DNA from: Styela clava
Lineage: Eukaryota
NCBI RefSeq assembly: GCF_964204865.1
Contig: NC_135252.1
Span: forward strand, 16,988,001-17,052,000
Reading direction: 5' to 3'
DNA: 64,000 nt
Positions 1,146 to 63,407 of this stretch are shown here, piece after piece. A program made the translations under genes and the position numbers. The notes beneath the pieces are model-generated. The model searched no databases, was not told the DNA's origin, and was given only the letters and a program-made list of their open reading frames with translations. Each line of letters opens with the position of its first letter. Position 1 is the first letter of the stretch.

Positions 1146-4100
1146 TTATCTATTGACTTTAGTAAAAAATGGATGAAGTAATGCTTCTTTTGGCGTGATT
1201 CTGATATCAGCATCCCACCTGAATGAACGGATAGAAATCTATCAAATGTAAAGGATTATGAAGGAACATATTTAACATCATGAAAGCGCACTTCGGTTTA
1301 AACTTGGTATACTAATAGAGTTGCACTTAGATATTTATTTTCATCTTCCACGGTGAAATGGTAAAATACTTACTCCAAACATTCTGAAATTAAATCGAAC
1401 AGCAGAGGATCAATATCTCTCAAAACATAATCAAGCGGTCTCTTTCCGGGTATGCGACGGAACCATGTCCTGGTTGCATAGGAGATTGCTCCTGCCAACA
1501 TAAGGCATTGCATTAAAACTGCTAATTTGTGTTGTGTCTGTAGAGATGATATACATTTCAAAAGATATCAACAAGATGTAAAATAGGAACTGTGCTTTGA
1601 TAAACAGCGAAATTGAACGTCTACGTTAATTTGTTGTCAGATGGTGCGTGGCAATAATTTTTACAAGTCAGCAATGTTAAATTGTCAGATCTTACCACAA
1701 GCAATTTTAACCAGATTGGTAGCCAGAGCTGGTTAATCTGAAACCCCCTTGTCGGTTTGAAGTTTGTGACTGATCAATTAGAATAGACTGGTCACAGCTT
1801 TCTGAGCTGATTTGTATTACTCGGAAATTTGCTGATCTAGCTGTAATGTTGGATATCTAGTTCTATGTCGTACAACAATTTGAAAACTATATGTTCATTC
1901 ACCATTCACAACTGAGGTAAAAATACAAATAATCAAACGCTACATACTTGCATATATTTCTTTTGCTTGTGAAATGATATATGCGGGCGGAAGACCAATA
2001 ACTTCCATCATTGCTGCAAACTGATCCACCTCGTCTCTACCAATAAATAATGGAGTGCCAAGAAAAAGTTGAGCCATTATCACGCCTAAACTGAACATGT
2101 CGGATTGTGATGATACAGGTAAGTTTAATAAGCTCTCCGGTGATCTGCAATACAATGGTTGGAAAACGACTCCTTCCGGACAGCGGTAGTGGAAATCTGG
2201 AATTCAATACAATTCAAATCATCAAATGCTGTTCTCATATCTTTGTTTATATAAATCTTAATGGAGGATGCATTGGGGGTTTAGTTCGGTGGAGACGCCC
2301 GGTAGAAAACTTTTGACAGTTATAATCTATGGCGTTTGTCTTACATATATATATTTTTTTATATATAATTTTTCTACCGAGCCGTAAGTGTTGTTTTGGA
2401 TACTACACGAGGTTGAAAAGCACAAAAAGTAGAATAACGCAAAGTCTTAACAAATGAAGTGATGATCAAAACGATACGATCAAAAAAGAATATTTCTTAC
2501 CTTCCGCATGGGGAACACAACTCAGGTCAAAATCTCCAACTTTTAGTAGTTGGCCTTCACTCTGATCATTTTTTTCATAAAGAAACATTATATTTTGCTG
2601 TAAACAAACGACAGTCAAGTTGGGAAAGCATTTGTATAGAACGAATAGTGAAGTATAGTAAAAAATGGAAAATAACATTTGTAATCTTGTTTAAAATTTG
2701 AATCATCAATCTTGAAATTTATTTCTAAAATTTTTATTAATAAAATATTTCGACAGCCCAAAAAAGTTTCATTTGACTATTTATTGATTATATTATCTTT
2801 CAAATAAGCAATATATTTAAGTTACCAGTTTTAAATCTGAGTGGAAAATGTTGAGTTCACTCAAGTAATACATTGCGTGCATGATGTCGCTTGAAAAACG
2901 TCGTAATAAATCTAGACTTTCTACCGGACGATTGGAATAAATATCATGTAGTGAATCTCTAAACGGATAATAATTCATCTAGATTATGAAATTTATTTCG
3001 ATTTCTGCCATAAAAAGTCGCGAACAAACAAGAGTGAAAATCCGGAAAAAGGGAGGGAACAAAGTAAAATTTGAAAAGTAAAAAGCACTTTCTCTGTCAT
3101 CGACACAAAAACGATAACACACCACATGGATGAATATTTACAAAATCCACGAATTAATTAAGCCCTTCAATTTCTATACGTTTCAAGGAAATATTTTCAA
3201 ATGATTTTATACTCCTCTGAAAAATTAGGCAGTAACAATATATATATAGAGAAATTTCACATTACCCCAATAATTCTTGAACGATACAATAATGATTTCG
3301 GAAATAAATTGTATCAAACATCCGTGAAAAATAATTTTTGTTGGTTGCGTTCGACCCTATATATTTCATTATACCCAGTTCTCTCATGTAAAGATCTTTA
3401 CCCCTGTAAAACAAGGCGAATCCATTGAATGGAATCCTGGAGTACACTGGACTAATATCGCAGAATAGACGTAGCATGTGTCCACTACCTTGGTCAGGTG
3501 GTAGCGATTTAGAACTGCTATCATTGATTATATCGAATATACTCATCATATTACTCTTCCAAGTATTTTGGAATTGGAAAGATGAAGCCAATTCACACTT
3601 AGATAATTCTCGATTTTAATTGCATGCGGGCAAAGAATTTAACAATAGAATCTAGTTCTTTGATGCACCCAAGAACCGTCTTAAGACAAATTCTGATTCA
3701 TGAACGACCTGAAAAGAGTCGTTTTCACGAACTTGAGGAATTGCTTTATACAATTGCTGCAAACTAGTAGAATTTATTATAAATGAATACGGTATATCAA
3801 TTCGTTAGGCCATACGCGTCAGCGCTACATTTTGTCATTAGTTGCCAATTGGGGTATTGATTTTTAGTTTGACTTAAGGCCGGCTGCTATAAAAAAAAAT
3901 TCATTATCGAAATATTAAAACTTTTTCCTTACAATTGATGACTCATCGGGCTACGCGAACCACTACCTATGTTGTTCTCTTTTCCTGATATAAGAGAGCA
4001 AAGGGCAACATATACAAATTTAATTCTTGCTAGCGGACAATAAATCTACATGGGTGGTCGGTCACAGGTTAGTGCGTCTGACAATAAAAAATTGTATCGA

Positions 4101-5812
4101 ATATACCCAATTTCTTCAATACCACAATGTTTTGTCATGTTTTATGCGTAGCATTATACCTTGTAAAACACACCATATGTTTGTAAAAAAAATTAACCAT
4201 TACCGTGCTGTTGTATTGACCAATATTTTAATCGCAAGCAATTCATTATTTGAATGATCCAATACTTTCACGGTTGTACCTCCGTTGCCCATTCCAAGAT
4301 TCTTTAATATTTGATAACGATATGCGATGTGATCGTTCAAAACCTATTGAAAAGAATGGATCATAGCATTGAAACTGCATCTCTTATTCAAAATAATGAT
4401 ATATATTATTGCACAATCAATCACATATTTTCTGAGTATAGCATAAGTAACTATGATATAGATCTAACCACTTTATATTGTCCTTTATATCTTCCTGACT
4501 CAATATCAAATCCGTAATTGTTATCAGCCTCTTGGTGAACTTCTGTTTTGTTTGCACCTTCTCCTACGTACCAAATCTTTTCATATTTCATGATTTCTTT
4601 TTTCTCCCATGGAGTTAGTTCATCTCCAAATATTAGTAGTGCATCTAGCTCAGAGTAATAATTGAAAAAAATGTGGAAAGTCGCTCAAAATTTTTACATG
4701 CATATAGATACAATGGATAGAAGATATTAGCTGCACTAATGGTTTACGTTTATCAATTTTTCCCAAATTTTGAAATGTCTTATTTATCAAATACTTTTTA
4801 CAATGTGAAAAATAAAAAGTTGCAACGACAACTCTTTTATGTCGACCATATTACTCATATTGTGATCATTGAAATAAAACATAAAATTCGCAATAGTTTA
4901 ATTATAAATTTCTTACTAACCTTCTGGGGTAAGGGGAAATGTTTGCGATCGATTTGAATGAATAATCTCATCGTCAACTTCCATGCCTTTCTGATCTGTA
5001 AATATTTTTATATACTTAAATAAACTTCAAGCCTATATCTTTGTTTCGGTTGGTTGACATTTAATTGAAATCAGAAATATATACATATATAACGTAGGCA
5101 AGTTTGATAGTAAACGATACCGAAATGAGGAATTGTTCTCATTTTTGTAACATTGATCATAATCTGGAATTTGAAATTTGAAAACGATTGGTCTATTAGT
5201 AGCAAAGAAAAAGATTTGCAACAATAACAGCAACAATAACAATAACAACAATAACAATAACAATAACAGCAACAACATCAATTTAGAAAAACGCTACAAA
5301 GGTCCACCTTCTGTTCAATAAAAATTACCAATGGTCTTGTTTCGCTCTTCATCATTATCCAAAAAGTTGTTTTCCGACTTATCCTCGAAAAATGAGTCAG
5401 TGGCTGCAAAATGCGGATTATTCTCAATGCCTGGAATGTTCAATTGGCGATTGGGGCTTTTGACAACGATGACGTCATAATCTCCCTGTCTAAATTTGTA
5501 TTGTTTGTCAAATTTGGTTTTAACTTTTCTGTCACAAAACTTGTCACTTATCTGAGTATATTCTTCTACATCTAATCTCACTTTTCCAAGGTCAAGATTC
5601 TCATCCGAACTCAAAATTTCGTTTTGTGTTGTTTTTTGCATACCCGCCATCCAAAAGTGTCCAACTTGATTTAAAAATGCATTTTTTGTTTCAGTACAAA
5701 TAGATTCTTCACCGTTTGTTGTTTCATACATTGTAAAATAACTCGCAATGGAGACGAAAATACAAAACATCAGAGCATAGCGGATTTTTGTTTTCACATG
5801 CCAACAATACAT
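1146..5812 (-). CDS. Signal-anchored class II DYRK-like protein kinase, paralog 1 (DFD variant), about 560-584 aa
   Basis: Phase-compatible GT-AG exons: 5812-5329 (MYCWHVKTKIRYALMFCIFVSIASYFTMY + stem), optional 5192-5121, 4995-4921 (..FPLTPE), 4644-4469 (DALLIFGDELTPWEKKEIMKYEKIWYVGEGANKT..NNYGFD..GQYKV; NAPA/DH-like), 4343-4204 (DHIAYRYQILKNLGMGNGG..LAIK), 3403-3266 (MREL..FRNHYCIVQELLG), 2958-2826 (HSDLKL), 2597-2501 (QNIM..KVGDFDLSCVP), 2196-1948 (..RCPEGVVFQPLYCRSPE..DMFSLG), 1491-1374 (DPLLFDLISECLE), 1218-1146 (WDADIRITPKEALLHPFFTKVNR*). Motifs match the DYRK2-type pattern DHxAYRYE / FRNHxC / DFGxSC / CLEWDP. Confidence 0.88.
5218..5280 (+). repeat. (AAC/AAT)n trinucleotide microsatellite in first intron of paralog 1
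   Basis: gcaacaataacagcaacaataacaataacaac.. tract; it produces the spurious poly-Leu ORF 5033-5281. Confidence 0.85.
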
Positions 5813-6020
5813 GATTACAGATTGGTTGTTTGTAATATTGTGTTATCGTAGCTTCATAATATTTCCAATAATATTTGTCTTGCATATTCATCATATTATA
5901 TCATATTCATATTCATTTTATAAATCCAGCACTTGAAACTCACTGCAAAAATAAACCAACGAGATTTTACTGGAACTAAAGAAGGCAGAGTGCATTTGGG
6001 TGTATAATGAAGGATATATT

Positions 6021-9655: not shown

Positions 9656-12600
9656 TTAATTTATTGTTAAGTATGGATGACGTAAAGCTTCTTCTGCAGT
9701 AATTCTCACTTTTGGATCCCACCTAGGACAAGAAAAGAAAGCGACTTGAAGAATAACTGGTACTCCTGAAGTATGTGCATCAAGATGTCGCACAACCTGA
9801 ACCTTAACCTGGTACATAACCTGATTCTTAACCTGGTACACAACCTGAGTTCAGGTTGTGCGCCATTTTGGTTCGCATACTTCAGGAGGTCCGAATAACG
9901 AATACAATTTTTTTTCAGGTAGTTCAAGAGAAAAGAGATTTTATATATTAACAGAAATAAAAGTGAAATACCATCAACAGCATATAATACCAAAACGATA
10001 CTAGAGTCACCTTGCGTCTAATAAAATACTCACTTAAGACACCGTGTTATTAAATCAATCAGCAGTGGGTTAAGTCCTTCCAGTAGTTCGTTTAGATTTC
10101 TGAGATAAGGATTCTGATGGAATCCGTTCAATATTGTAAAATCTAAAGCCGCTGTTGAATAAAAAGATAATTAGCTTGAAGTGAGGTGACTTATAATTTA
10201 TCTGTTGCTAATGACCCTTCGTAATATTATTTCGATAATGAACACATTGAATGACACAGGTGATGTCTGTTTACCCTTTGTATGAAGGCCAGCTATCGGA
10301 CCGAGTTTAATTTTTTGTCAAAAGTGTAGTTACTAGTAAGCAATATAAAATGGGAGGATTATTTTTTTTTTTTTTTTATGGCGGAGTTGGGTTAAGGCCA
10401 AATACCCGAGCTTGGTGAATAATGTAACTAATAAATAGGGGCATGCCAAACTTTTCCGCTGCCCAAAACTAGGTTATGATAATTAGGCCCATTATACCTA
10501 ATTTCAAATATAATTCGGGGAATAAACAAATTATAGATGTTGTCATACATGAGAATAAATAAATTAATGGTAAATTAAGACTGAAATGCTTGTATTATTA
10601 ATTAAACCATCGAACTAAGCAACAAACTCACGTGTATAAGAGCAAATTCATTTATATGTTGCCCGGGGCCGCTGCCCGCATCTACGGCCCTCCCTAACAA
10701 AGCTCAAAAACAGTTTTCAGAAACGGACGCTCACCAGCGAAAACCTCTCTTCTTTGCGAAATATCAATTAGATGTGCAGGTGGAAATCCAAGCACTTGCA
10801 TCATCGCGGCCAGTTGTGCAACCTCGTTGTTTCCCATGAAAGGTGGAAAGCCAATGATGAACTCAACTAGTAGTACACCAACGCTGAATATGTCGCATTT
10901 GGTAGTTACAGGCAAACATAAAATACTTTCTGGAGATCGATAGAATCTTGGTTGGAGATAGTAATCCCCACATTTGTGATCTGTGAATAGACAATGAGTA
11001 TAGAAACAATGACAAACATTTTGTTTAATAGGACTTGATGTTACGTCCTGAAATAGTGTATCTAATTTTAACTAATTAGATTCAGTGACGATACAAATGA
11101 AAATTTATAGCAAAATAATTATTCCTGCATAAGATTTTCGTTTAAAAAACATTTAACATGAGCTACAACTTGTGAACATCAAATTATACTATATTACCGT
11201 ATATATATTTAAGTATTTATTTGCAATTAAATTATGTATTCGATTGTCCTATCAAAATGTAAGTGTTAGGAAATTATCATTTCTGGATTAACCGCATTTT
11301 TAAAAATAACTTTTACAATTATCAGTTTTTTTTTATTTTTACACAAACCAAAGGGATTAAAATACCAATTTGACCATTAAACGTAAATAACTTGGTTTTA
11401 GCATTTTAATCACTATAACAAAAAGCAAGTAGTAATTGCCGTAACGTGGAAATTACCGTACATAATACAATTACTTTACTACTAAACCATCCCAAAAACT
11501 GACCTATTTCTTTACCAAATGCCAGCGCATTTTTTAGAGCTGCTCGTAGGCACACATAAAATAGGGCCTTATATCCAGCGAATTACATGAGACCCGATAT
11601 GGGTACAGGTAGAGGATAATAACAAGAGCCAGAATTTTGAAATATAAAATAAATTCGTCCTTACATTTTAGTTCAAGTACAAACCCACGATTAAAGTAGC
11701 ATTGCGTACACGCAGGAGTAACGCGGAACTATGGAAGTTTGGGACCCTCTGTGGCCACATAGGCCTCTGTAGTAGGCTAAAACCAGCCATGTTGAAAGGT
11801 TTCCCAGCTTTTGATGTACACTGTTCAGTTTATTACCTGTGGAACCGGGAATACAACTCATTCCAAAGTCAACAAGTTTTAAAAGTTGCCCTTCGCTTTG
11901 ATTAGTTTTACCGCGAATATACATGATGTTTTCCTGAAATGAAAAATATGTATTATTATTTTCGGTGCTCCCGAAGTATGCGAACCAAGATGGCGGACAT
12001 CGGAACGTAACATGGGTAACAGGTTAGGGTTAAGCGATATTTTTTTCCAATTTTCCTTATTTTAGTCCCATTATCAGTTCGAAGACTAGCCAAGAGCCTC
12101 CCGTAGTATTTATACCTAACGGCTAACATTATGGCCTAACCCTAACCTAGTACACATATTACATTCCGATGTCCGCCATCTTGGTTCGCATACTTCGGGA
12201 TCCCCTTATTTTCTATATAAGGGCGCAATACCAGGCAAAGTATAATTCAATCCCCTCTTTAATGCTCCTTTTTAAGCCCAATTGAGATCAATATTTACCG
12301 GTTTGACATCTGAATGTAGAATATTGAGGTTGTGTAGGTAGTATAACCCGTGAAAAGTATCATTCGTATATCGACGCATTACATCAGCATCCTCGATAGC
12401 ACCAAGACCAATTGAAGGCCTGTGAAAATTTGACGTGGTTAGAATTTTCCCAAATAGCCTACTCGCGTTTACTCTTAGTTTGAGTAGTTTAAATGTGTGC
12501 ATAAATAAGTATTATTGTAGTAATAAAGGACTAAAGAATACAAAACACAAAGCAATATTCCTTCCCGAGCATGACAAAATTCTTTCGTCGAGTGGAATTC

Positions 12601-15549
12601 CTACCCGGTTGGGAAACGCGAGTCTAACGAACAATTAATTTATCAGTTTTGAGGGTTGGTCAGTCAGTCAGTCAAGAAAAAAAAACGAAGAAACGTGAGT
12701 TAGGCAACTTTTTCAAGCTTGCAATTTGAGCGGTGAGATTTTGAGATAGTCAACTTCTCTCGACATTCTAAACTACAAATTTTTATTATAATATTCAGTT
12801 TGTTGGTGTAATACCCTCTTATTAGACCAAATATGCTACATTCACTCTGCATGACCCCTTTACAACTTTTAAAATAAATAAGTAGAGATAGTCCGTGCAT
12901 TCCACCAAATACTGAAAAATTCTGTTAAGTGTCTAAGTCAGTTCCCACATGCCCACATTTTTTATGATTCAAGGATGTTTCCTAAAACAATAAATGATTT
13001 CGATGTTTTTACCCCATCAGCTCCAATACTAGACACCAATGATTGCGAAATCGAAAGTAGTCAATCAAATGTGTGAAGTAGTCAAGATCTGTTGCATTTG
13101 CCTCGATGAATTTCATGATTTCAAGCTCTCGATGAAAGTAGATTTCGCTTCTATTATAGTAGAAATACATAAATATTATGGTCAAGGAAATCTAGAGAAT
13201 GATAGAATATCAAAATTAAATTATCATTTGGAAACATCTGGTGCATTTTAATGAGTTTATCGCCTACATTTTTGCATCAAATACGACTTGGCTCATATAG
13301 TTGGGCCGAATAATGTGAAAGAGTGAATTTTTCTGACTTTTTTTTTAACGGACGTCAATGGGGCAGCAATTGTTAATAACAAATGATACAATTATTTTCT
13401 GTCTGATATGTCTGAACGTGCCATTTCAATTTGATCTTGTTTCGTTTATTACGGCTGTGTTTGACCTAAATATTCGGTGAATAATTATATACTCGTACAG
13501 AGTGACCCAAAAAATACAATCAATAAATATTTTGATTACTTCTACAAAAATATAAGAATATTTATTTAACACTTGAATTATTTTTTGTTTGTATATAATC
13601 GTGTATGCAAAGGTTTCAGTGACCTGGGATGCTTTGCACAAAACTTATGTTCCTTCTAGGATATGGTTCCAAATGGATGGGTTTTGTTTTTTGTGTTACC
13701 TTGTATATGAAAGTCAACTCACTTCATATTACCAGTCACAATTTTCAATGCAACGCTTTCATTATTAGAGTGATCAATCGCTTCCACCACAATTCCTTGC
13801 AATCCCATCCCAAGTTCTCTAACTATCTCATATCTGTATGCGATGTGATCTCGAATTGCCTTGTGCAAAAAAGTTTTATTCAGATTAGAATTCATAAACT
13901 GGCGAATAAAATACCGTAACAACTAAAGACTCTGTTTTAGATGAACTTTGATTGTGCAGGTCGAATAGACAAACGAAATCACCATGCTGTAATCTGATAA
14001 GATGCATGTTTTTTTACATTCAGATTTATATGTAATAATCACGTTAGGATGTAGAAAATGTTATTGTTTTAGAAATAATTGAGTTCTCACCAATTTATAA
14101 TGTCCTTTCTTAGCTCCAGATGAATAATCAAATCCATAGTTATCATAGGCAGTTGGATGACTTTGTGTTTTGTTCGCATCGAGACCGAGGTACCAAATAT
14201 TAGAGTAACTGAAAATTTCATTTTGTTCCCATGGACTCAGATACTTTCCAAACGTTCTGATGGCATCTGTATCACATTAAGTATATGCATAAACGCATTG
14301 GACCTTTAAATAATTTGTGTTTTCATGTTTGAAACTGAATCATTTGAATGAACTAGTAATTTCGAAGAGAAAATTATGATTTAATTGGGAACGAAATGCA
14401 AGAGGACGACGAGAGTTGAAGATATTTGATTGAAATTGCAAATATTGAGTTATCGAGTACAAACCTGTTGGTGTAATTGGAAATTTAACTTCCATTTCTT
14501 CACGTTGTAAAGTCGAAGTCTTGCCTTCATCATTATATATTCTGAAAATATTTTCGTCGAATAGAGGAATTTCAAATTCGTTTAAGGTCTCCTTATTTCG
14601 TCTTATATTCCTAAAAATCAATTTAAAAAAATAAATCATTGTTTTTTTCTGTATCAATAAATATTGTTGTTATAGATGTATTAAAAGTTTGTAGCATACG
14701 TTTTTCATAATAAAATAAAAAATAATTTCCATATCTTATTCTTAATATACTTTATAGTTTTTCTTCTTGGTTTTATGAATAAATTTTAAAACCATGGAAT
14801 TTTCCCAAATAAAACAAATTTTTCTTACTGGATTTCTTCAACGCTTTTATCGTCGCGCTTCATTATTTTTTTATTGGATTGGCTGTTGCTTGTCAAGATA
14901 TCTAGAAGGTGAATCATCAAGTTAAAAATGCTGCATAAAATCTCAACCCTTGGTAGAAGAAGATATTATTGGGTATTTTTTATAATCTTAAGCCCTCGTT
15001 AAAATATTTTATAATTTAATACAATCTGTTTCATTTTAGGAGTTCACTTACTGTAAATCGAGGCATTTATTTGCAAGCTATTTTAAACTTGGCAGAAGAA
15101 CCCCAATCAAAAATAAGTAATGTTTAAAATTGGATCCGTCCCAATTTTCCACTCAGTTGAGACCGCGAGCTAAGTTAAACAATGTATCTCGATTCTTTCC
15201 TGCAAATCTAAGCACACGCATAAATACTGTATTACTTACTTCTGTTTTCAGCGATAGAGTCCTCACTCCATTGGTTAAAAGGTATTTGCTTATTTACATC
15301 AAAATTATCTTTTTTGCCATCTTGTATCGAACTCGGAATTTTTGAGGTTTGCTCATTATCAAATTCATTGCTATTATCTCTTTCATTCACAATACGATGT
15401 GTATTGTCAGAATCGACAAAATATCTTATGTTCTTGTCATATTTCAATATATGGATATTTATATTCAAAAGTCCGTTCAAAGCAATCACGAGAATTGTAC
15501 AAATTACTATTGCACATAAAAATCTTCTTGATCGCCGAAAACTAAGCAT
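9656..15549 (-). CDS. Signal-anchored class II DYRK-like protein kinase, paralog 2, about 542 aa
   Basis: Exons: 15549-15240 (MLSFRRSRRFLCAIVICTILVIALNGLL + stem), 14901-14829, 14610-14465 (..FPITPT), 14266-14091 (DAIRTFGKYLSPWEQNEIFSYSNIWYLGLDANKT..NYGFD), 13859-13723 (DHIAYRYEIVRELGMGLQG..VALK), 13150-13013 (HRELE..FRNHWCLVLELMG), 12419-12299 (HSDVKP), 11933-11837 (ENIM..NQSEGQLLKLVDFGMSCIP), 10980-10735 (DHKCGDYYLQPRFYRSPE), 10151-10034, 9722-9656 (WDPKVRITAEEALRHPYLTIN*). All junctions are GT-AG and in phase. Confidence 0.88.
9763..9888. mobile_element. Palindromic MITE family A (intron of paralog 2)
   Basis: TIR ctcctgaagtatgtgcatcaagatg / cattttggttcgcatacttcaggag; same family as 11968-12200, 34126-34300 and 37387-37610. 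Confidence 0.7.
11968..12200. mobile_element. Palindromic MITE family A (intron of paralog 2)
   Basis: Long TIRs tcccgaagtatgcgaaccaagatggcggacatcggaa / ttccgatgtccgccatcttggttcgcatacttcggga with internal ggttagggtt / cctaaccctaacc motifs. Confidence 0.8.
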
Positions 15550-19560: not shown

Positions 19561-19833
19561 CGTGTATCAACGTCTTTGTACTGGAAAGTCCGTTCAGAGC
19601 AATCACTGTCGCATATAAAAATCTTTTTGAACATTGAAAACTAAACATAACATTGCACTTTTATTATCCAAATTACGTGTCTTCGTTCCACAATGTTACC
19701 GTCGACTTGTAAAATGAATCTATCGAGATAACATGCAATTTAGATATTGTCATGCGTTTAGCGATTCGTTATATGTTTTTCCTTTCCCTAAAGTTTCGAG
19801 TGTTGGTAATATCGACTCGAGTTGAAAATATTC
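19560..19833 (-). pseudogene. Orphan truncated duplicate of paralog 2 first exon and upstream region
   Basis: 19580-19833 aligns by eye with 15470-15755 (shared cataacattgcactttta, accgtcgacttgta, gtaatatcgactcgagt). It encodes MFSFQCSKRFLYATVIALNGLS versus MLSFRRSRRFLCAIVICTILVIALNGLL, with a deletion in the hydrophobic segment. It runs into a repeat at about 19560 and has no stem or kinase exons of its own. Confidence 0.75.
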
Positions 19834-53633: not shown

Positions 53634-56600
53634 ATGTTGTGCTTCCGTGCAAAAATCAAAGTTCGTTATACATTACTGTTGTTCTCGTTTTTTGCCTTTT
53701 CATTTTATGGCATTGCAAGAGTTCGGACATTTTTACATCACACAGTAGCCCAGGAAACAAATAATGACGTAGCTCCTGACGTCATTCGTCGCTCTTTAAC
53801 CGCAAGGTGGCACGACAGTAGGGAACTTCTCAATAAAATTTCTAAAACGAGGAATAAGTTTTTAGCTGGAGAGAGAACACCTCCGAAATGGGACTCAGAC
53901 GTAGATGGGCAACTAGTCATCGAAGAAGACAATTGGCCGCCAACAAAGTCTGACCCTGTGACCCAAAAGGACTTAATAGCAAACGAAAATGAAATTATTG
54001 AAAATAGTGATATAGATATTCCCGACTCTTGGGATGAGAATTCTTTAATAGACGATAAAAATGAAGCCGAATTGCGTGAAACTACTGTTCCTAATCCTGA
54101 AGAAGACTTTGGGGGAAATAATTACGATGATGCTGATGTTCAAGATTCAAAAAAACAAAATACGTACAATAAAGGTGAGTTAATATCATCGGTTGTTTTT
54201 GACGATAATTTACTGAGAAATCAGTTTTTTAATATTCCAGTTTTCTGTGGCATAGAAGTGTCAATCATTACTTTTTTCATTATTTAGATTTTATGGATGA
54301 TATAGAAGCTCAATCTAGGGAAGCTTATCCAGGAATTGAAGAAAGGTAAATATGTTTTATGTATACGATTATGTTTATTCCAATTTCAACAAACTTTCGT
54401 TTAATAAAATCGTTATAATATAATAATAAAATCACGTATCATAAAACTACGCATCATTATAACGAGTTGTGTCTTTGCAATTAAACGAGCTGACACATTG
54501 GAGTAGGGTTTCCCAAACTGGGTTTCTTTATTGAGCCACGGAGTAGTGCAAAAACGTTTAATGTGTATCATTTGTGATGACTACAATAATTTAAAATAAA
54601 TTGACTGTGCTTTTATTGTGTTGCCTTGGTTTGCTGGCTATATTATTGTTAAACTTGGTTTATAAAATAATTGATGAAAACGCGCTAAAAACATAGATAT
54701 ATATAGAAGCGCCACAGGTGGTGAGACTTGTTTGAGAGTTGGCCACTGATCATGAAACTTCAACATGAAAAGAGTGTTAGGCCACATTGTGATGTAATAA
54801 TCAATGTATAATGGGCCTATGGCCAACAATACAAAATCAAAGCATAATCATTTGATATGAAGACGAGAGGTCAGAAGGTTATCATCAAACAGTTTAAAAC
54901 AGAATATTGTGTTTATGATATACCCAAATAAACAGGATATCTTCAACTTTATGGGGTAAGAGATAGAACTGAGACCGTGAAACCGCTGTTTCCAATTGTA
55001 ACGAGATTTTCCAGTTTAATGGATGCATGAGTGATGTTCTCGCGAGATTTGAAATCTATTTATGGAGTTCAGTTCAGAACGCACAGTTCAAAAAACATGA
55101 AAACATATTTTCTCAAATGACTATATTATACAAAAGTTGTCTTTATTAACTTTCGACCTATTTAAAATGGATTTTTTATAACTTGGCTTTTATATCTTTA
55201 TAACTAGCCCATAGGGACAATTAGCACGTTTTTGGGTTTCGCGGTTTTATTTTCAAAATCCTGAACTTCGGTAATCAGTTTGACATTCACATTTATTCCC
55301 CACGGAATATTCAACATTTAAACATGCTGACAAACAGTGTGTTAAATATACTGCAAATATACTGTTATAAATCCGCTTCAAAGGACATCGGGGCAGCCGG
55401 TTGTATGTAGTCTACGTATGAGTGAACCTGTTGCTTTTTGAAAGATATGTACGATCTTTATGGTTGAATTTGAGCGCCAACATAGTGGAGTTTTTGGCAT
55501 CCGCCCGGTTTAATTCAATTAACATATCTTCCAAAGTCAATTTATCTGGGTATTTTCAACAGTGTTTGTAAGTTGAGTCTCTTCTTGTTTCTGATCACAG
55601 ACTAAACAATTTCATTGAAAAGCCGATAATTCGACCTCATTATGCGAACTGTCTGGGAATACTCAGGCATCAGGAGATCCCTGCTGCTTGTGGTGTCTCA
55701 CCGCATTCATTATAAAAATCATCGACGACATGTGTGGCCAATTTTGACAGTAATATCGAAATTCAGTGATTTATGTCCGATGTAACTTGAAAAAAAAAGA
55801 TAAAATTAAATAAATTTACCAGACTGTAGCTTTGCAAACCTAATTCAATGTTAATTAATTTTTCATATGTTTAAAATTTCTCAAACTCGAAGCAAATGTG
55901 AAAAATTTAGGCTGAATATACTAACCGGACGTACGTAACACAAATATCTTTAATAAAAACTACTGAAAAAGTTGAACCATTTACTTTGCACTTAACAGCC
56001 CTACAGTGGAATCACGCTACGGCGTATAAGATTTTGCCGCATTTTTTACCTGTCATACTTGAACCTAGTGTGCTATATATTGATTAAGTCCCTGATTTTT
56101 TTACTGTGGAATTCCACTAAATTTACACTACTATATTCCACACATAAGTTCAATTATTCATTTTCTCTGACAGCAGACAGAATAATCACAAAAAAGATGA
56201 TCCCACGCAGAATTTTCAACTCAACCTGAAACTTGACACGAGACATGATGACGAACAGCCGCAGTATGATAACGGAGACGTTCATGCTGAAACCATCGAG
56301 GAATACGGTGAAAACGAGGAAGAAGATGAACCAGAAATTGCTGAAGACGCTGAAGAATACGACGATAATAAACCCGAAGAAAATAATCGAGAAATTGCCA
56401 CGGAAAAAATACCTGAAAATAGAAACGCAAATCAAAAATTTAATAAAACAATTTTCCAGCCAAATGACAGCAAAATCAAGTATTACATATCTGAAAACTT
56501 GGAATCGTTCACTCGTTCACAAATTAATGGAAGCAGAATTGCGAATTTTGGAAGAGCAAATGATTTTCCCATGACTCCAGAAGGTGAGTCACGAATTCGT

Positions 56601-59600
56601 TAATTTCATTTGAATTTCAGATATTTCTCTCGTTGCCTGAAATCACGGTATTCGATACTTTTAATCGTCACCGTTCATTTATTCAAAACACATCACGAAA
56701 TCTGGGGCCGAAACACGATATTCATGTATCAAATTGAGAAATTAATATAATTAAATATCGTAAAATATTGCACCCTTCTGCAATAAATAAATCGGTCTTA
56801 AATTTTAATGAATAAACAAAAGTATAATATTCCCTGCTTTTAAAATATTAATACGATTACCGGTAATTTTGAAAATATCTAGAAATTTTCGGGCGTCCCA
56901 ACAAAAATTCTTAAGAAAATCTTTTTTTATCGGCACTTTCAAATTTGATGAGCTATAATGTCGATGAAATCACAATTCAGTTATTATATATATTTCAATG
57001 TTGCATTAGCTTTTGGAATGATTTCTTTTCTCAGCAACCATTGTGCTGTACGTAAGATTTTATGGAACGTCATAAATAATTTCGGTCATTCGAGTATGAC
57101 GTCACAATGTAAGAATGTGTTATTTTGCAAGTATTCGGAACGCTATTTCACCACTGTAAACCAAATCACTACTTTTATACCATTAAATCGATGCTTTCGC
57201 ACTTAAATTAGTGGTCTTTTCAACAAAAATACAGTATTTCAAATGTCTTTCAGAGGAATTATAGTCTATTAGAAAATTGTGTTATTTATAGAATTTTGTC
57301 TGAAACCAGAATGTCGTTAATTAAATCATCATTTCTTAAATTAAACATCCCCGGTACAAGAATATATAGAATCTCCACCCAATTTTCTAAAATATACCCA
57401 ACTTATATGAATTTAGTATTTAATTAATTAAGTTATTTAAGGAAGTAGGAAATAATATTAAATATTATAATTAGGGAACTCTAATTATTGTTAAAACTGA
57501 TTTATATAACTTCAGTTTTGTCCAAGTACGATTTGCCTTAAAACTAGTATATAAAGAGTAATGTATTACTGTCCGTGCCTTTTAATAGTAGTCATGATTA
57601 CTATTAAAATTTAGTTAGTTTAGCATGTTTCATTTTATTGCAATGGGATTTAATTAATAGAAGCGGATACAATTTTGAGGATATTAGTTAATATGGTAAT
57701 TACGATGGTAATATTACAGTATTACGTATATTCCATCCTATTTAATTTAACGAATTTACAATTATCAGTTTCATAACTTATTTAGATGCGGTCAGAAAAT
57801 ATGGCGATGATCTTCCATCTTGGGAGAAATATGAGATTTTTCATTATCCAAAAATATATTATCTCGGACTTGGAGCAAACAAAACTCAAGTTCAACAAAA
57901 CATCAGCAATAATTTTGGATTCGATTTTGATGCAGGAACGGAAAAGGAAGGACATTATAAAGTGGTAAGATTTGAAATTTAAAACAAAAATGCTCAAAAT
58001 ATATATATTTAAACCGAGCGATAATACAATTATATAATACAATATATAATATAATGTATGTATAATACAATTAGATTAATCAATTAAATGTAATTTCTTT
58101 GTTTTAATCACTAAATATTATTTAAAATCTAAAAATGTTACGGTATCAATTTTTGAATATTTTTCAAAATTTGGCTTCTCAAAAAGTTAGTACAAAGCTA
58201 TTTACCATAATTTCAAAAGTTTAGTGTATATAAAATACCAATACCTTGGTGTCTTGACTATAGGAATTCTAATATGGCCCACACCATATGAATTGCTCAA
58301 CTTAGTTTCATTTTCAAATTCCCATCTCAACAAGGAACCTTTTACGGTTACAGATCCATTCACCACTTATTTTTGTAACAAAAGAGATTTCATATGTACT
58401 ACACACAATACTAGAGATTAGGTGTTTTTGGAACGTTAGTCTAAGGTACTTGTTTCTATGGTATTCACGAAAAAGAATTTCAATTGGCTTAAATGATTAA
58501 TATAATGAAAAAAAAAACATTGATGGCGCATTTAAAGTAAGAGGGGGAATTTTGTTTATTGATTTTACTTCATCGTCATCAAAGTGACCGAGTTTTGTTT
58601 ACCACATTTTTGTATTTCAGGTTATTGGCGATCACATAGGTTATCGATATGAAATATTAAAGTATGTTGATGCTGGTACATTCGGTGCTGTTGTCCTGGC
58701 AAGAGATTGGTCAAACCCGATTGCCAGAGACGTAGCTCTGAAGATCATGCATTTAGATGAGTATGTTCAGTTTAATTTCATTTTATATGAGACTTTGAAA
58801 CAGCGAGATCGACACAAACCAAAAAATTAAATTAATAAACAAATGAATTTAGACCTTATTAAGTGTATTCCTCGACGTACTTTTAAATATGTTGAAACTT
58901 ATCCGAGAATCTTAAACAACCTGCAACCCGTAGTAAAATTTATGCGCTTAATATTTATTTTCTTGTTGAAAATTAACGCAAACATTGCAACTTCGCCATT
59001 TAGCATGATAGGGGGGAAATTGAAGCTTGACAAACTTCTGAAATAAAATTGTTGACAATAACTCTGCATGGTACAACTAAATTTCTCATTTTCTTCAAAG
59101 TTGATAATTGTTGATTACCAAATATCATTTATATAAACAACATGTTTTTTTTTCGAGTTTCCATTTTGTGATACGAAACGCGGTGGTTTGACTAGATTCA
59201 AAGCTACTATGCCAACATTCTTGAGATATGCTGTCATGCCACTGTAATTCATTTACTGCTCACCGTGGATTCTAGTGCCTTCCAATTGACTCTAATTTGA
59301 TTTCATTCCCCCGCGTTCAATTGACCCCTCTATTTAATTTTTTTTTTCATTTTTAGAGAAGAAAAATATTTTCTGAGAGAAGTCAGAATGATGGAATACT
59401 TGGAAAAATATGCATCAAATCATAATTATTTTTCGAGAATGATCGCGACGTTTCAGTTCCGTAATCATTGGTGCATTGTCATGGAATTACTCGGGTAAAA
59501 TGAAATTATTTACTGACTACTCTATGCAAGTATTAACTTTTTATCAATCTTGCCTCGCAAATTGCTGATGTAATGAATAAAAGAAACAAGAACAATAAAA

Positions 59601-62600
59601 AGTTATGTGACTCTTGATTTAACTTTCCTTCAGTCACATAACAAAACATTGAATCCATCGCTCAGTCAGTTCGCATGTCAGAATTTCATTTTAAAAAATG
59701 ACTTCAATCAAAATAATTCAAGGTGGGATTCACCTCGACTCCAATGGTCCATTAATAATTTACCTAGCCCTACAGAGCACCTAAATCGCTGAAATTCCCT
59801 TTGCAAGTTCCAAATTGCAAGCTTACAGTTAAATAAGAGTTTCTTTATCCCAAACTAAACCAGAGACCAATATGTTCTCACAATATTTGTTGATACCTAC
59901 ATATTTTGAGATATTTTTGAAAAGTGAAATATCGTGTTGATACACGATTTTCTCTTTTACTCCTGTTTTGCACAGGCGATACCAGCCATCGCCTGTACTT
60001 TGAGCCTTAACCCCGTATTTGGCCCGTTTTCTAACAGTAGTCGCGCAGACTTTTTCGTGCTATGGACCATTTCAATTATTTGCCCACAACTTGGGAAATC
60101 ATTTAATTATAACAAGCCTGATTTATCAAGTCGCCCTTGATTTGTCGTCGTGGTCAAGTTAAACCACCATTTTGCTATTGCTCAGCGAATCTCTGACTAC
60201 ATCAGGCATGCGTGCCATTCAAATAGCCATATCTTATAATTGCTGGTTTCTCATTTTATTACTCTCCATAACATATAATAATAATAATATACAGTAATGA
60301 AATTATGTTATAACTTTTTTCCCACGCAGGCACGCCGTTGATCGTCACTACTTGGGACACCCAGTACGGAATCCTCATATATTGAGACAATTCTCCAGCG
60401 ATATCATAAAAGCAATGTATTATCTGAACGAACTCAATATTGTGCACGGAGATTTAAAACCGGTAATTTAATCTTATTCTTTATATCTACGTGAATAGGC
60501 GTAGTTGGTCCCAAATAGATTAAAATTAAATCTGTGAATACATCCAATACCTGAAGACACGTTCTTTCTGTAAATCCGTAAAAAACTGAAATGAAGTTAT
60601 TAGACTTCGTTCAATTTTATTCAATTTGACAAGGATTGTATTAGTTTTATAGAGAGCTTAGAAAATTCCAATCTTATTTTAGCAAGATCCAACTTGAATC
60701 AAATCAGTATCGAAATATTTGAAAGATTTAAAAACCGTAGTTAGAATCACCCCTATTACTCAAACTCAAACTCGATTTTGATACTGTTGGTCTCGACCCT
60801 TGGGGTCCACTTTATAAAAACGAAATTTCGTTTGACTTGTTTCAAGCTAATTAATCGATAATCAATCGATAATTAATCAATCAATTCTATAATCTCATAA
60901 ACTAGATTGATTTATTCATTTAAATTTAACTTTTCTCATTTTCAATACCACGACATGATTTTTTTCCCTGTTTATCGCTATTTTTCGAGTTTCTTGAATT
61001 TGCAATTTCTTCAATCATTACTCAATATTTCCTCTTTCCTTTATTCCAGGACAACATCATGTACATATATGGGAAGAATAATGAAAGTAAAGGACAACTT
61101 CTCAAAGTAGCAGATTTTGGAATAAGTTGTATCCCTGGCTCGGAAGGTAACAGTGAAATTGATTTTTTTATTTTTAGCAAATGTTTCACAGTTCCTGTTA
61201 ATTGATACTGAAAAATCAATATGATAGATAGTGATACAGATGGATACGAAAATAGTAGTCAGTGTTCAACAATGCAAATGCCAAGAGTTGTTCGTAGAAT
61301 TCATCAACCCAACACTATCTAGACGTCTTTATTGTAAAATTAGATGAAAGAGACATTGGCATAAACATAGTCTTACATTGGTTGGGTACTAATAAGCGAT
61401 TCGCATGGGAATAAGCGCCGAAAATAAGCGAAGCGCTCGAGATTCACATATGGGACATATGTGGACAATGTACCTTTAACAATGCCACTTAATACAACAT
61501 TCTATGCCAACATTTTACATATACACCATTTTTGCAATTAAAAATTGATGAAATTTTTAGAATGCACAGTCAGCGATAACAAACAATTTTGCTGTTTAAT
61601 TGTTGTAATATAAACAAACAGCAACATAAATAGCCTTTGCAAAAGTGTGATGCCCAACAGCTAATTTGAAACACTGTCTAGTTGAACGTGATTCTTACTG
61701 CGCTCTAGTTCTTCATTAAACAACGGTAAACGCTTGCCAGAATCCGAAATATGAAACATTTGTGATGTAATATTCAATCCGAAATTGAAAGATAAAAACT
61801 TAATCACGTCTAAACGCTAATGAAACTACGCTAAAAAAAACTACAAAGGTTAAACATATGGCGTTGAGTCATTAATTCGAGGTAAAGAAGATTGTGTTCA
61901 ATATATTTCCCTTAAATTCACTCAAGTTCTTGATGCTCAACGACCAAGCCACTATAATTCCTTAATAAACCTAAAAATTTGACTGAAATTAATGAAGTTC
62001 CGAGTGCAGCTTTTGCGTTGTATAAAATTTATTGAATGGCTAACACTAGCACACAATAAAAATAGAACGCTGAAATTTTTTGAATAAATTGTAATTGATT
62101 AGAGCAGGATACAGCAATGCTTATACAATCAGGTCAATCACTAAATCTTCTCAGAAAAAGTGCACGTAAAAAGGCGATAAAGAACCAGATGACTTCTGGT
62201 GTTTCAAACACGTGGTGTGAAATTGGTGTGAAACAAATAATTCAATAATTGTTACGCCACTTTGGCTTGTCGTGTAACAAACGCGTAATAGTAATAATAT
62301 GAATTGTGATTCGGGCTTTTTTCTGGGTTAAGATAGATACAATAATCTGCATATCAAGTGAAGTTCATACAATTGAGATAAGTGGCACAAACTTTTTGAG
62401 ACACATCATTGTTTCCTGTTTTTGGTGTTAGTAAATGAATCACAAATTTGACCATGTTTTCATTTTGTACAGATTATCACTGCCCAGAGTATTACATCCA
62501 AACTCGTTATTACCGAGCACCAGAGGTTATTCTGAGTTTACCAATCACTCCCCAGTGTGACATGTTCAGTGTCGGAGTGATTTTGGCAGAGTTTTGGTTG

Positions 62601-63407
62601 GGTGTGCCACCTTTCTTCGGGGAAACCGAGGCCGATCAGCTGGCAGCAATGATGGAAGTAATCGGCCTTCCACCAACATACATGATTGCAAAATCTCGGA
62701 GAAAGAAAATCTATGCAAGTAAGTAGGCGTTTATTTTGCCTGCGCATTTCATTGTGATACCAAATTTGGATCTTTAGGGAACAATGCAGACGAACCACGG
62801 TCCTTCTTAGCCAATGACGCGCTTCAAAATTTTAAGAACGGGTTCTTCTTCATTACATTGAACTCACTAACAACAGGTTCCCTCATTCCAGGAAACTATG
62901 TCGAATTAAGGCCCTAAACACAATAATGGGTTCGTACGAACCCTTGTGAAACCCCCGAGTCCCATCTCTGCTTCAAGCTAATGATAACAACAATCATTTG
63001 CGACCAATGTCTTCATTCTAAATTTAACTTTAATATTTTTGTTGTCTATACGCCTCTTTTGTTTGAAAATCAATTTTCTTTACTGATTTCATTTAACGAT
63101 ATATACGCAGTCTTTATGAAAGAACTGTGTAAAGCCAGCGCACAGTTACCCATTTTTCATAGCGAGTTCGATTTATGAAATATGAGAAACTGTAATTGCT
63201 AGCTTTAGTCAGGTGAATAAAGGCATTCATTAAATTTTGGAGCTACCAACAGTTTTATATATCTTATAATTTGGTATTTACGTTAACAGAAGCAATATGT
63301 TACACAACTGAAAACGGATTTCACCGTAAACCTTATCGCAAGCCTTTGACCAAAGTCCTGAACGGAATGGATCCAATGTTGTTTGATTTAATTGCAAGAT
63401 GTCTGGA
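53634..63407 (+). CDS. Signal-anchored class II DYRK-like protein kinase, paralog 5 (acidic stem; 3' partial, final WDP exon beyond the window)
   Basis: Exons: 53634-54174 (MLCFRAKIKVRYTLLLFSFFAFSFYGIA + stem), 54288-54345, 56174-56583 (acidic stem ..EEYGENEEEDEPEIAEDAEEYDD..FPMTPE), 57786-57964 (DAVRKYGDDLPSWEKYEIFHYPKIYYLGLGANKT..), 58621-58760 (DHIGYRYEILKYVDAGTFG..VALK), 59357-59494 (LREV..FRNHWCIVMELLG), 60330-60462 (HGDLKP), 61050-61146 (DNIM..NESKGQLLKVADFGISCIP), 62473-62718 (DYHCPEYYIQTRYYRAPE), 63290-63407 (DPMLFDLIARCLE). Confidence 0.9.

What the first reader, a model, noticed from the sequence alone, without database searches (positions are those of the whole stretch)
1146..63407. 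Five-gene cluster of DYRK-derived kinases with type II membrane (secretory-pathway) architecture
Seen in sequence: all five paralogs start with a 9-11 aa basic tail, one 15-20 aa hydrophobic segment and a divergent stem of roughly 150-300 aa. The stem splices in phase (fully traced in paralogs 1, 2, 4, 5) to a conserved FP[LIM][TS]P exon, a NAPA/DH-box-like exon and a complete kinase domain, which ends just after HP[FY] in the four complete genes. Established knowledge: DYRK2/3/4 are soluble cytosolic/nuclear CMGC kinases with no transmembrane segment. The secretory-pathway kinases I know (Fam20, Four-jointed, VLK/PKDCC, POMK, FAM69/DIPK, FAM198) are not CMGC-derived. Tail-TM-stem-catalytic domain is the Golgi glycosyltransferase layout. 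Inference: a DYRK was recruited to the ER/Golgi lumen or extracellular space and expanded into a family that may phosphorylate secreted proteins or glycans. I know of no description of such a family.
Basis: partly seen in the sequence, partly recalled or inferred. Interest (0 to 1): 0.95.

Follow-up and report, generated by a model that had tools for sequence, protein, structure and literature searches.

The report
Membrane-anchored DYRK2-like kinases of tunicates
The window (sea squirt Styela clava) holds five expressed, intact copies of a DYRK2-type protein kinase that begins with a membrane anchor. The family occurs across tunicates, and its sequence suggests that the kinase sits inside the secretory pathway or outside the cell, which is not known for this kinase class.

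Summary
The window (Styela clava, G000:C3) carries five ten- to eleven-exon paralogs of a class-2 DYRK-like kinase. Each starts with a basic tail, one hydrophobic segment and a divergent stem. For paralog A, RNA contigs join exon 1 to every kinase exon at GT..AG introns. B, C and E match RefSeq proteins exactly.

- **Extent of the family.** S. clava has at least 10 genes. Orthologs exist in Ciona intestinalis, Oikopleura dioica and metatranscriptomes. Many of those have two hydrophobic segments flanking a conserved basic motif ([RK]xK[ILMV]KxR[FY]).
- **Phylogeny.** The family is one clade (100/100, long stem). Its best solved relative is human DYRK2, including the NAPA/DH box.
- **Evidence for a lumenal or extracellular kinase domain.**
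  - Positive-inside charge pattern in 20/20 members.
  - Family-only conserved N-glycosylation sequons (ANKT 16/20 against 0/17 canonical).
  - Five canonical cysteines lost, including the HCD Cys (0/20 against 17/17).
  - A new invariant Cys gained 8-11 residues (24 in one member) after the DFGxSC Cys.
- **Limits.** Topology is inferred, not shown. No paper describes the family, and RefSeq names the proteins only "DYRK2/3/4-like".

Verdict: a real family and a new variant of a known kind, of high interest.

The parts
1146..5812 (-). Paralog A, 560 aa, 10 exons: 5812-5329, 4995-4921, 4644-4469, 4343-4204, 3403-3266, 2958-2826, 2597-2501, 2196-1948, 1491-1374, 1218-1146 (stop 1148-1146)
   Evidence: Spliced RNA contigs of four runs give every junction but one as a joint; the exon 6/7 junction comes from loose ends. 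All introns are GT..AG and the ORF is open. An in-frame TAA at 5845-5843 lies inside the transcribed leader.
5729..5776 (-). Paralog A hydrophobic segment (residues 13-28), preceded by a basic tail of net charge +3
9656..15549 (-). Paralog B, 542 aa, 11 exons; identical to RefSeq P0185 (XP_039268667.2). Exon 1 is about 15549-15240, the extra stem exon 14899-14828, and the hydrophobic segment 15445-15522.
   Evidence: Exact exon-by-exon mapping; motifs; AlphaFold model.
20712..27808 (-). Paralog C, 635 aa, 10 exons; identical to RefSeq P0155 (XP_039268466.2). Exon 1 is 27808-27289 and the hydrophobic segment 27740-27781.
   Evidence: The exon 1 to exon 2 junction was also the top splice-site-score prediction.
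30845..35978 (+). Paralog D, 643 aa, 10 exons: 30845-31287, 31580-31899, 32668-32843, 33122-33258, 33785-33922, 34331-34466, 34997-35105, 35258-35494, 35635-35755, 35864-35978. The hydrophobic segment is 30878-30922.
   Evidence: Homology- and phase-guided model with an open ORF. The junctions parallel its sister gene P0156. There is no direct RNA evidence for D.
53634..63408 (+). Paralog E, first 10 of 11 exons; identical to residues 1-687 of RefSeq P0154 (XP_039267506.2, 727 aa). The last exon is beyond the window. The hydrophobic segment is 53673-53717 and the micro-exon 54287-54343.
19540..19900 (-). Relic copy of paralog B's promoter and first ~25 codons, 80% identical, with an 18-nt deletion in the hydrophobic-segment coding part; no downstream exons

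Best explanation
These are functional, expressed genes for a tunicate family of protein kinases that descends from a class-2 DYRK (DYRK2/3/4 type).

Architecture. Each protein has an N-terminal signal anchor. In the Styela copies this is a basic cytosolic tail plus one short hydrophobic segment. In Ciona, Oikopleura and several metatranscriptome relatives it is a hairpin of two segments around the same basic motif. A disordered, fast-evolving stem follows, and then a complete NAPA/DH-box plus kinase module.

Most likely mechanism (inferred). The basic motif stays in the cytosol. The stem and kinase are translocated into the ER lumen, so the enzyme works as a type II membrane kinase of the ER/Golgi or cell surface. 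It would be N-glycosylated at conserved sequons and would act on secretory or extracellular substrates.

Catalysis. The catalytic residues are kept: beta3 Lys, alphaC Glu, the catalytic-loop Asp and Asn, and the DFG Asp. The redox-sensitive HCD cysteine has been removed. A new invariant cysteine in the activation segment probably pairs with the DFGxSC cysteine.

Within Styela the gene expanded in tandem. Copies A, C and D have also dropped the activation-loop tyrosine together with its arginine partner.
For: SHOWN
- Five intact paralogs.
- Exon 1 is spliced to the kinase exons in RNA contigs, and the transcribed leader holds an in-frame stop.
- Pkinase domain at E 1e-40 or better.
- The best solved sequence match is human DYRK2, E 1e-58. 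It covers FPITP to HPYL, so it includes NAPA/DH.
- AlphaFold model of B: an N-terminal helix over residues 2-41 (pLDDT 92-95 over residues 11-30), a stem with pLDDT under 50 over residues 42-163, and a kinase module with block-mean pLDDT of 87 or more apart from one weaker block. The top structural hits are DYRK2 and DYRK3, TM-score 0.84 normalised to the target.
- The family is one clade, 100/100, stem length 0.93. Its internal order is Oikopleura type, then Ciona type, then Styela.
- Members: Ciona P0190, Oikopleura P0226, at least 10 Styela genes.

SUPPORTING THE LUMENAL READING
- The flank before the stem-proximal segment carries +2 to +7 and exceeds the flank after it in 20/20 members. 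In two-segment members the N-terminus carries -2 to +1 and the loop +3 to +7. That predicts N-out, loop-in, C-out.
- Sequon columns found only in the family: ANKT 16/20 against 0/17 canonical; Nx[ST]NNFGFD 11/20 against 0/17; NxT after the beta3 Lys 11/20 against 0/17.
- Core sequons: 46 observed against 23.5 expected from shuffles in 14 members. Canonical kinases: 7 against 12.6.
- Cysteines: HCD Cys 0% against 100%. Four other canonical Cys columns fall to 0-5% from 65-94%. The KCP Cys is 100% against 0%, and the DFGxSC Cys is 100%.
- PMC3677093 reports that the HCD Cys and the DFGSSC Cys of DYRK2 lie 4.2 A apart and could form a redox-regulating disulfide.
Against: - No topology predictor, glycoprotein data or localisation data were available. 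Orientation rests on the positive-inside rule and on indirect signatures.
- The sequon and cysteine counts are inflated by shared ancestry: seven Oikopleura-type rows and nine Styela rows.
- Sequons in the stems are enriched only in D and its sister D2.
- Ciona-type members lack the ANKT sequon.
- The Styela hydrophobic runs are short (14-16 aa) and only marginally hydrophobic over 19 residues.
- DFG is DFD in A and DFA in C, and the glycine-rich loops are unusual, so some copies could be weak or inactive.
- DYRKs are thought to need autophosphorylation while folding, which has never been shown in the ER lumen.
- The kinase tree does not resolve the sister group of the family.
Confidence: 0.6

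Rival explanations
1. The anchor tethers the kinase to an organelle or the plasma membrane with the kinase domain facing the cytosol. Precedents are LMTK2 (two N-terminal helices, cytosolic kinase) and PINK1 on mitochondria. On this reading it is a locally acting but otherwise ordinary DYRK.
For: - DYRKs are cytosolic or nuclear enzymes with cytosolic partners and ready ATP.
- Two-segment N-termini exist in Ciona, Oikopleura and other members.
- The Styela segments are only moderately hydrophobic.
- The LMTK2 and PINK1 precedents are from my own knowledge and were not tested here.
Against: - The charge pattern is the reverse of what this topology needs. The basic cluster lies before the stem-proximal segment in 20/20 members and inside the hairpin loop in the two-segment members.
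- Family-only conserved sequons and the purge of canonical cysteines, including the HCD Cys, have no obvious cause in the cytosol.
- The flank after the segment is not consistently basic, as mitochondrial outer-membrane anchors require.
Confidence: 0.2
2. In the single-segment Styela copies the hydrophobic run is a cleaved signal peptide. The kinases would then be soluble and secreted, or soluble in the lumen, rather than type II membrane proteins.
For: - The hydrophobic runs are 14-16 aa in A, C, D and E, within signal-peptide range.
- Small residues that could serve at -3/-1 follow the run in A, C and E (read from the sequences).
Against: - The region before the run is 9-13 aa and holds a motif conserved from Oikopleura to Styela, which argues for a retained cytosolic function.
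- Orthologs have 17-19 aa second segments in a hairpin, which cannot be cleaved signals.
- B has a 26-aa uncharged run.
- No cleavage predictor could be run.
Confidence: 0.15
3. Exon 1 is wrongly joined, or the genes are decaying duplicates (pseudogenes or pseudokinases) without function.
For: - DFD and DFA replace DFG in A and C, and the glycine-rich loops are degenerate.
- A relic 5' fragment of B exists at 19.6 kb.
- One low-depth RNA contig uses an alternative acceptor that shifts the frame.
Against: - RNA contigs chain exon 1 through exon 10 of A.
- All five ORFs are open, and intron phases are conserved from the FPxTP exon onward.
- The key catalytic residues are kept in all five copies.
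- The architecture recurs in Ciona, Oikopleura and intron-free metatranscriptome ORFs.
Confidence: 0.03

Closest known systems
Human DYRK2 (also DYRK3, DYRK4): class-2 DYRK kinases
   Same: Best sequence match (E 1e-58) and best structural match (TM-score 0.84 normalised to the target). Both share the FPxTP lead-in, NAPA-1, DH box, NAPA-2 and a complete CMGC kinase domain with the Lys, Glu, Asp, Asn and Asp catalytic residues. Most members keep the activation-loop Tyr and its Arg partners.
   Different: - One or two N-terminal membrane segments and a long disordered stem.
- The HCD Cys is absent in all members.
- The activation segment is longer and carries a new invariant Cys.
- Five to six residues are inserted before DFG.
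- The CMGC insert is shorter.
- Four further canonical Cys are lost.
- Conserved N-glycosylation sequons are present.
- A, C and D lack the activation Tyr.
Secretory-pathway kinases: Fam20C, Four-jointed, VLK/PKDCC, POMK, DIPK/FAM69 (own knowledge)
   Same: The predicted layout is a short cytosolic tail, a signal anchor or signal peptide, a stem and a lumenal catalytic domain. They would work alike, phosphorylating substrates in the lumen or outside the cell.
   Different: Those enzymes are atypical or highly divergent kinase folds unrelated to the CMGC group. This family is a canonical CMGC kinase by sequence and by predicted fold. No lumenal localisation has been shown for it.
Golgi type II glycosyltransferases (own knowledge)
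   Same: Short basic tail with membrane-proximal [RK]x[RK]-type residues, a short membrane segment, a variable glycosylated stem and a globular catalytic domain.
   Different: The catalytic domain is a protein kinase. Whether the basic motif serves ER export or Golgi retention is untested.
LMTK2 and PINK1: kinases with N-terminal membrane segments and a cytosolic kinase domain (own knowledge)
   Same: The membrane segment or segments lie N-terminal to a eukaryotic protein kinase domain.
   Different: The charge distribution is opposite. They have no conserved sequons in the kinase module and belong to different kinase groups.

Membership tests
Class-2 DYRK (DYRK2/3/4) | Kinase domain closest to DYRK2/3/4 among solved kinases | tested here: met
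   phmmer: DYRK2 1e-58, DYRK3 3e-53, DYRK1A 5e-38. Foldseek: DYRK2 and DYRK3 rank first.
Class-2 DYRK (DYRK2/3/4) | [quoted passage not shown] | tested here: met
   The alignment to DYRK2 starts at FPITP, 75 residues before the kinase domain. The region is conserved in all members and folded in the model.
Class-2 DYRK (DYRK2/3/4) | [quoted passage not shown] | tested here: not met
   0/20 family members have Cys there; they have S, M, A, G, T, R or N. All 17 canonical kinases have it.
Class-2 DYRK (DYRK2/3/4) | Activation-loop YxY with the second Tyr, bound by Arg325 and Arg328 (DYRK1A numbering) | tested here: inconclusive
   The second Tyr and both Arg are kept in B, E, Ciona, Oikopleura and 15/20 members overall. 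In A (Val/Leu), C (His/Tyr) and D (Thr/Leu) the Tyr and Arg325 are lost together. The first Tyr is not conserved.
Class-2 DYRK (DYRK2/3/4) | Soluble protein without a membrane segment | tested here: not met
   20/20 family members have an N-terminal hydrophobic segment, against 0/108 other DYRK-like proteins.
Class-2 DYRK (DYRK2/3/4) | Groups with metazoan DYRK2/3/4 in a kinase tree | tested here: inconclusive
   The family is a 100/100 clade on a long branch. Its position among class-2, class-1 and other DYRK-like rows is an unresolved polytomy.
Secretory-pathway (lumenal) protein kinases | N-terminal signal peptide or type II signal anchor | tested here: met
   By hydrophobicity, position and flank charge only. 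No dedicated predictor was available.
Secretory-pathway (lumenal) protein kinases | Catalytic domain located in the ER/Golgi lumen or outside the cell | not testable with these tools
   Only indirect signs are available: conserved sequons and the cysteine pattern.
Secretory-pathway (lumenal) protein kinases | Fam20/Fjx1/VLK-type atypical kinase fold | tested here: not met
   Canonical Pkinase/CMGC by Pfam and by fold.

The most novel reading that the evidence does not exclude
Tunicates evolved, before their main lineages split, a class of CMGC (DYRK2-derived) kinases that work in the lumen of the secretory pathway or on the cell surface. In these enzymes the cytosolic redox-sensitive HCD cysteine was replaced by an intra-activation-segment disulfide. 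They are N-glycosylated in the NAPA/DH region and phosphorylate secreted or matrix proteins, possibly of the tunic or the larvacean house. This would be the first canonical eukaryotic protein kinase family recruited wholesale to the extracytosolic space of animals.
Probability: 0.5. Interest if true: 0.9.

Novelty: new variant of a known kind. Interest (0 to 1): 0.8.

Why it matters
All secretory-pathway kinases of animals known to me (Fam20C, Four-jointed, VLK, POMK, DIPK) are atypical folds. A canonical CMGC kinase that folds and works in the oxidising, glycosylating lumen would have several consequences:

- It would show that ordinary kinases can be re-targeted there.
- It would show which changes that takes: cysteine purge, a new cysteine pair, added sequons.
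- It would open a search for extracellular phosphorylation targets in the sister group of vertebrates.
- It would give a natural experiment on DYRK activation. The HCD Cys is gone in all members, and the activation Tyr and its Arg partner are lost together in three Styela copies.

The hypothesis can be tested directly in Ciona, where electroporation, in situ data and CRISPR are routine.

Tried and rejected
- **Joined models.** The spliced proteins of A and D were built only inside scripts from window.fa, for local hydrophobicity, alignment and tree work. Database searches used one exon by reference (window:1949-2194:-) and RefSeq or collection protein ids.
The samples and contexts of the metatranscriptome relatives are therefore unknown. 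P0170 is assigned to the appendicularian type only through 73% identity to Oikopleura dioica proteins.
- **Whole-protein search for homologous proteins with P0010** scored only the 8000 most word-rich candidates and gave little. Region-restricted searches worked.
- **Stem sequons.** Enrichment is significant only in D and D2 (8 against 3.7, and 7 against 3.2). It is absent in A, B, C and E, so the stems give no general support.
- **5' loose end of A's transcripts.** The 58-letter end was not found in the window with up to 3 mismatches. It is left unexplained. It cannot extend the ORF, because an in-frame stop lies downstream of it.
- **Not available here:** SignalP, DeepTMHMM, Phobius.
- **Disulfide geometry.** The structure tool returns no coordinates, so the distance between the two activation-segment cysteines could not be measured.
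- Only paralog A has direct junction evidence here. B, C and E rest on RefSeq models, and D on homology.
- **Pseudogene or artefact reading:** rejected (see rivals).
- **Organism.** An early guess of a flatworm, based on other notes of the scan, was dropped once exact RefSeq matches named Styela clava.

Full report
**1. What is in the window**

The window is AT-rich (about 34% GC) and has no N runs. An all-against-all comparison of stop-to-stop reading frames shows five sets of 9-10 homologous coding blocks at about 40-70% identity. Three lie on the minus strand (A, B, C) and two on the plus strand (D, E). The blocks match Pkinase and, among solved structures, DYRK1A, DYRK2, DYRK3 and HIPK2. 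The window is G000:C3:16988001-17052000 of a 377-Mb genome.

Three RefSeq proteins of Styela clava map onto B, C and E exon by exon at 100% identity: P0185 (XP_039268667.2), P0155 (XP_039268466.2) and P0154 (XP_039267506.2). The organism is therefore the ascidian Styela clava. RefSeq calls these proteins only "DYRK2-, 3- or 4-like".

**2. Does exon 1 belong to the kinase genes?**

Yes for paralog A, by direct evidence. Contigs of four public runs of the same organism were laid on window 1100-5900. They cover only the exons. They skip nine intervals whose ends read CT..AC on the plus strand, which is GT..AG on the gene strand.
- One contig links 4644|4921-4995|5329-5583, that is exon 3, exon 2 and exon 1.
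- Other contigs chain exons 3-4-5-6 and 7-8-9-10.
- The exon 6/7 junction is given by loose ends that match across 2597|2826.

The runs are labelled "RNA?" by guess, but removal of introns at canonical sites shows that they are cDNA. They are 95-99% identical to the window, too close to come from the 86%-identical sister gene A2.

The resulting model has 10 exons, all GT..AG, and an open frame of 560 aa. The transcript continues at least 80 nt upstream of the ATG at 5812. That leader holds an in-frame TAA at 5845-5843, so the hydrophobic N-terminus is the true start.

All five ATGs have an in-frame stop 5-24 codons upstream. D was modelled by homology, conserved intron phase and a splice-site score. 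Its 643-aa frame is open and parallels its sister gene P0156.

B and E have one additional small stem exon. E's last exon lies beyond the window.

**3. Anatomy of the proteins**

- **Tail and segment.** Each protein starts with a tail of 9-13 aa with net charge +3 to +5. An uncharged hydrophobic run of 14-16 aa follows (26 in B).
- **Stem.** The stem is 141-302 aa and is unalignable between paralog types.
- **Conserved module.** From the FPxTP motif onward, about 375 aa align with canonical class-2 DYRKs.
- **Model of B.** The AlphaFold model shows a confident N-terminal helix (pLDDT 92-95 over residues 11-30). The stem has pLDDT under 50 (residues 42-163). The NAPA/DH plus kinase module has block-mean pLDDT of 87 or more apart from one weaker block. 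Its best structural matches are DYRK2 and DYRK3.
- **Solved relatives by sequence.** DYRK2 is the best (E 1e-58). The alignment runs from FPITP to HPYL, so it includes the NAPA/DH region. DYRK1A scores 1e-38.
- **Catalytic residues in A-E.** The beta3 Lys, alphaC Glu, the H-x-D Asp, the catalytic-loop Lys and Asn, the DFG Asp and [AS]PE are all present. The DFG glycine is Asp in A and Ala in C. The glycine-rich loops lack the usual aromatic residue in A-D.

**4. The family is much wider than the window**

Styela clava has at least ten members:
- A2 and D2 and a fragment lie just upstream on C3.
- P0189 and a tandem pair lie on C9.

Another first-stage note (s1-825842) flagged one such gene elsewhere in the genome.

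A search with one exon against 1.8 billion representatives, followed by region-restricted searches, found these relatives:
- a Ciona intestinalis protein (P0190);
- Oikopleura dioica proteins (P0225, P0226);
- a Logan-assembled protein of unknown source that groups with the Styela E-type copies (P0188);
- intron-free metatranscriptome ORFs (P0058, P0125, P0165, P0170, P0222-P0228).

All share the activation-segment signature DFGxSC-x8-11-C[PG]..Y.QTR.YR[SA]PE. All that are complete at the N-terminus have a hydrophobic start.

Ciona, Oikopleura and six other rows have two hydrophobic segments separated by the same basic motif that precedes the single Styela segment. Examples are RAKLKVR, GRLKMKNRF and RAKIKVRY, with consensus [RK]xK[ILMV]KxR[FY].

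Among 108 other full-length DYRK-like kinases fetched here, none has a credible hydrophobic segment before the kinase domain.

A maximum-likelihood tree (LG+C20, 384 columns) recovers the family as one clade with 100/100 support on a long stem of 0.93.
- The internal order is Oikopleura type, then Ciona type, then Styela.
- The window's A-D types form a Styela-lineage expansion (100/96).
- The sister group is unresolved. The class-2 origin rests on the NAPA/DH box and the best-match evidence, not on the tree.

**5. Which side of the membrane?** (inferred, not shown)

a. **Charge.** In 20/20 members the flank before the stem-proximal segment (+2 to +7) is more positive than the flank after it (-3 to +4). 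In two-segment members the N-terminus carries -2 to +1 and the loop +3 to +7. By the positive-inside rule (established knowledge) the basic motif is cytosolic. The stem and kinase are then exoplasmic in both architectures.

b. **Sequons.** Three alignment columns of the folded module carry N-x-[ST] in most family members and in none of 17 canonical class-2 DYRKs:
- ANKT in NAPA-1: 16/20;
- Nx[ST] just before the NNFGFD DH box: 11/20;
- NxT after the beta3 Lys: 11/20.

All three occur in both Styela and Oikopleura-type lineages. Core sequons are about twice the shuffled expectation in the family (46 against 23.5). They are below expectation in canonical kinases (7 against 12.6). These counts share ancestry and are not independent.

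c. **Cysteines**.
- The HCD cysteine is present in 17/17 canonical rows and described as universal in DYRKs (PMC3677093). It is absent in 20/20 family members.
- Four more canonical Cys columns drop from 65-94% to 0-5%.
- A new Cys, 8-11 residues (24 in P0058) after the retained DFGxSC Cys, is invariant.

PMC3677093 notes that the HCD Cys and the DFGSSC Cys of DYRK2 lie 4.2 A apart and could form a regulatory disulfide. My inference follows from this. In an oxidising compartment that bond would be a liability. It was removed, and the DFGxSC Cys now pairs with the new Cys inside the activation segment.

d. **Short segments and membrane-proximal basic residues** resemble Golgi type II enzymes. 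This is a resemblance from my own knowledge and was not tested.

Against this reading:
- no predictor or experiment was available;
- stems are sequon-rich only in D and D2;
- Ciona-type members lack ANKT;
- the short Styela runs could be cleaved signal peptides.

**6. Activation mechanism**

The tyrosine equivalent to DYRK1A Tyr321 and both arginines that bind it are kept in B, E, Ciona, Oikopleura and 15/20 members overall. A/A2, C and D/D2 have lost the tyrosine and Arg325 together:
- A has Val and Leu;
- C has His and Tyr;
- D has Thr and Leu.

The roles of these residues are from PMC3677093. This co-loss suggests that three of the five window genes no longer depend on tyrosine autophosphorylation.

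**7. Comparison with what is known, and novelty**

The module is a class-2 DYRK by best match, NAPA/DH box and fold. It fails two features held to be general for DYRKs, the HCD motif and solubility, and partly a third, YxY.

It would work like the secretory-pathway kinases (Fam20C, Four-jointed, VLK, POMK, DIPK), but it is unrelated to them in fold.

Full-text searches gave no description of such proteins. I tried DYRK with transmembrane and ascidian, with signal peptide and secreted kinase, with Oikopleura, and with kinome and Ciona. A DYRK evolution paper does not mention transmembrane forms. The library lacks most subscription journals, so absence is not proof.

The gene models themselves are public. 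The new points are the architecture, its tunicate-wide conservation and the accompanying sequence changes.

**8. Verdict**

The DYRK origin and the membrane anchor are shown. The lumenal or extracellular location is the best-supported reading (about 0.6, plus about 0.15 for a cleaved, soluble secreted variant). A cytosol-facing tether is the main rival (about 0.2).

- only one reads call was allowed;
- the joined A and D models were used in scripts only and were not sent to search or fold tools.

Noticed in passing
window 19540-19900 (-) compared with 15430-15800 (-): A relic copy of paralog B's upstream region and first ~25 codons, 80% identical, with an 18-nt deletion inside the hydrophobic-segment coding part. 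It then reads into a C-rich repeat and no kinase exons follow.
   Followed up: partly
window 16000-18000: A C-rich stretch (GC 0.42, GC skew -0.27) with degenerate ~36-nt tandem units at 16203-16321. Similar Pro/Ser/Thr-rich open frames at 15936-16488 and 17431-17863 are probably a non-coding repeat inserted between B and the relic.
   Followed up: partly
window 9849-10001, 11882-12282, 34056-34327, 37344-37666: An interspersed repeat, present in both orientations, sits near the 3' end of B, in introns of B and D, and in the D-E intergenic region. It is probably a small mobile element.
   Followed up: no
window 36680-37036 compared with 63515-63746: Sequence downstream of D's stop codon resembles sequence inside E's last intron (about 50-59% in translation, several frames). 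It is either a shared repeat or a remnant of the duplication unit.
   Followed up: no
window 5893 (upstream end of paralog A transcripts): RNA contigs of all four runs leave the genome at 5893 (58 unmatched letters in three runs, 12 in the fourth). These letters were not found in the window with up to 3 mismatches. They could be an upstream 5' exon outside the stretch, a polymorphic AT-rich region, or a trans-spliced leader.
   Followed up: partly
window 5627 and 1491-1537: Two runs carry an in-frame 3-nt deletion in exon 1 of A, which is a coding polymorphism. One low-depth contig of another study uses an alternative acceptor at 1537 instead of 1491, adding 46 nt that would shift the frame.
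   Followed up: no
window 4646 to 5530: One contig of run X3 joins these places with non-canonical ends (AG..TC). It is probably a chimeric assembly rather than a splice.
   Followed up: no
G000:C3:16953492-16956213 (+), 16973180-16979627 (-), 16985287-16985439 (+); G000:C9:13509869-13517160, 13532374-13537461, 17348584-17357285: Further family members lie outside the window: A2 (P0001), D2 (P0156), a fragment about 2.6 kb upstream of the window, a tandem pair on C9, and P0189 on C9.
   Followed up: partly
G000:C18:10008956-10009870, C1:15311191-15312114, C14:5938314-5939189, several on C6 (about 21.7-22.5 Mb): Long single-exon open frames are 27-33% identical to the kinase module. These are other, apparently intron-less, CMGC-like kinase genes, including a cluster on C6.
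   Followed up: no
C-termini of E (P0154), P0189, P0188, P0058: A short conserved C-terminal tail, P.L[IM].R[LF].GK[IV], follows the kinase domain in the E-type members. It is faintly like the ...LPKIIGR end of canonical class-2 DYRKs. Its function is unknown.
   Followed up: no
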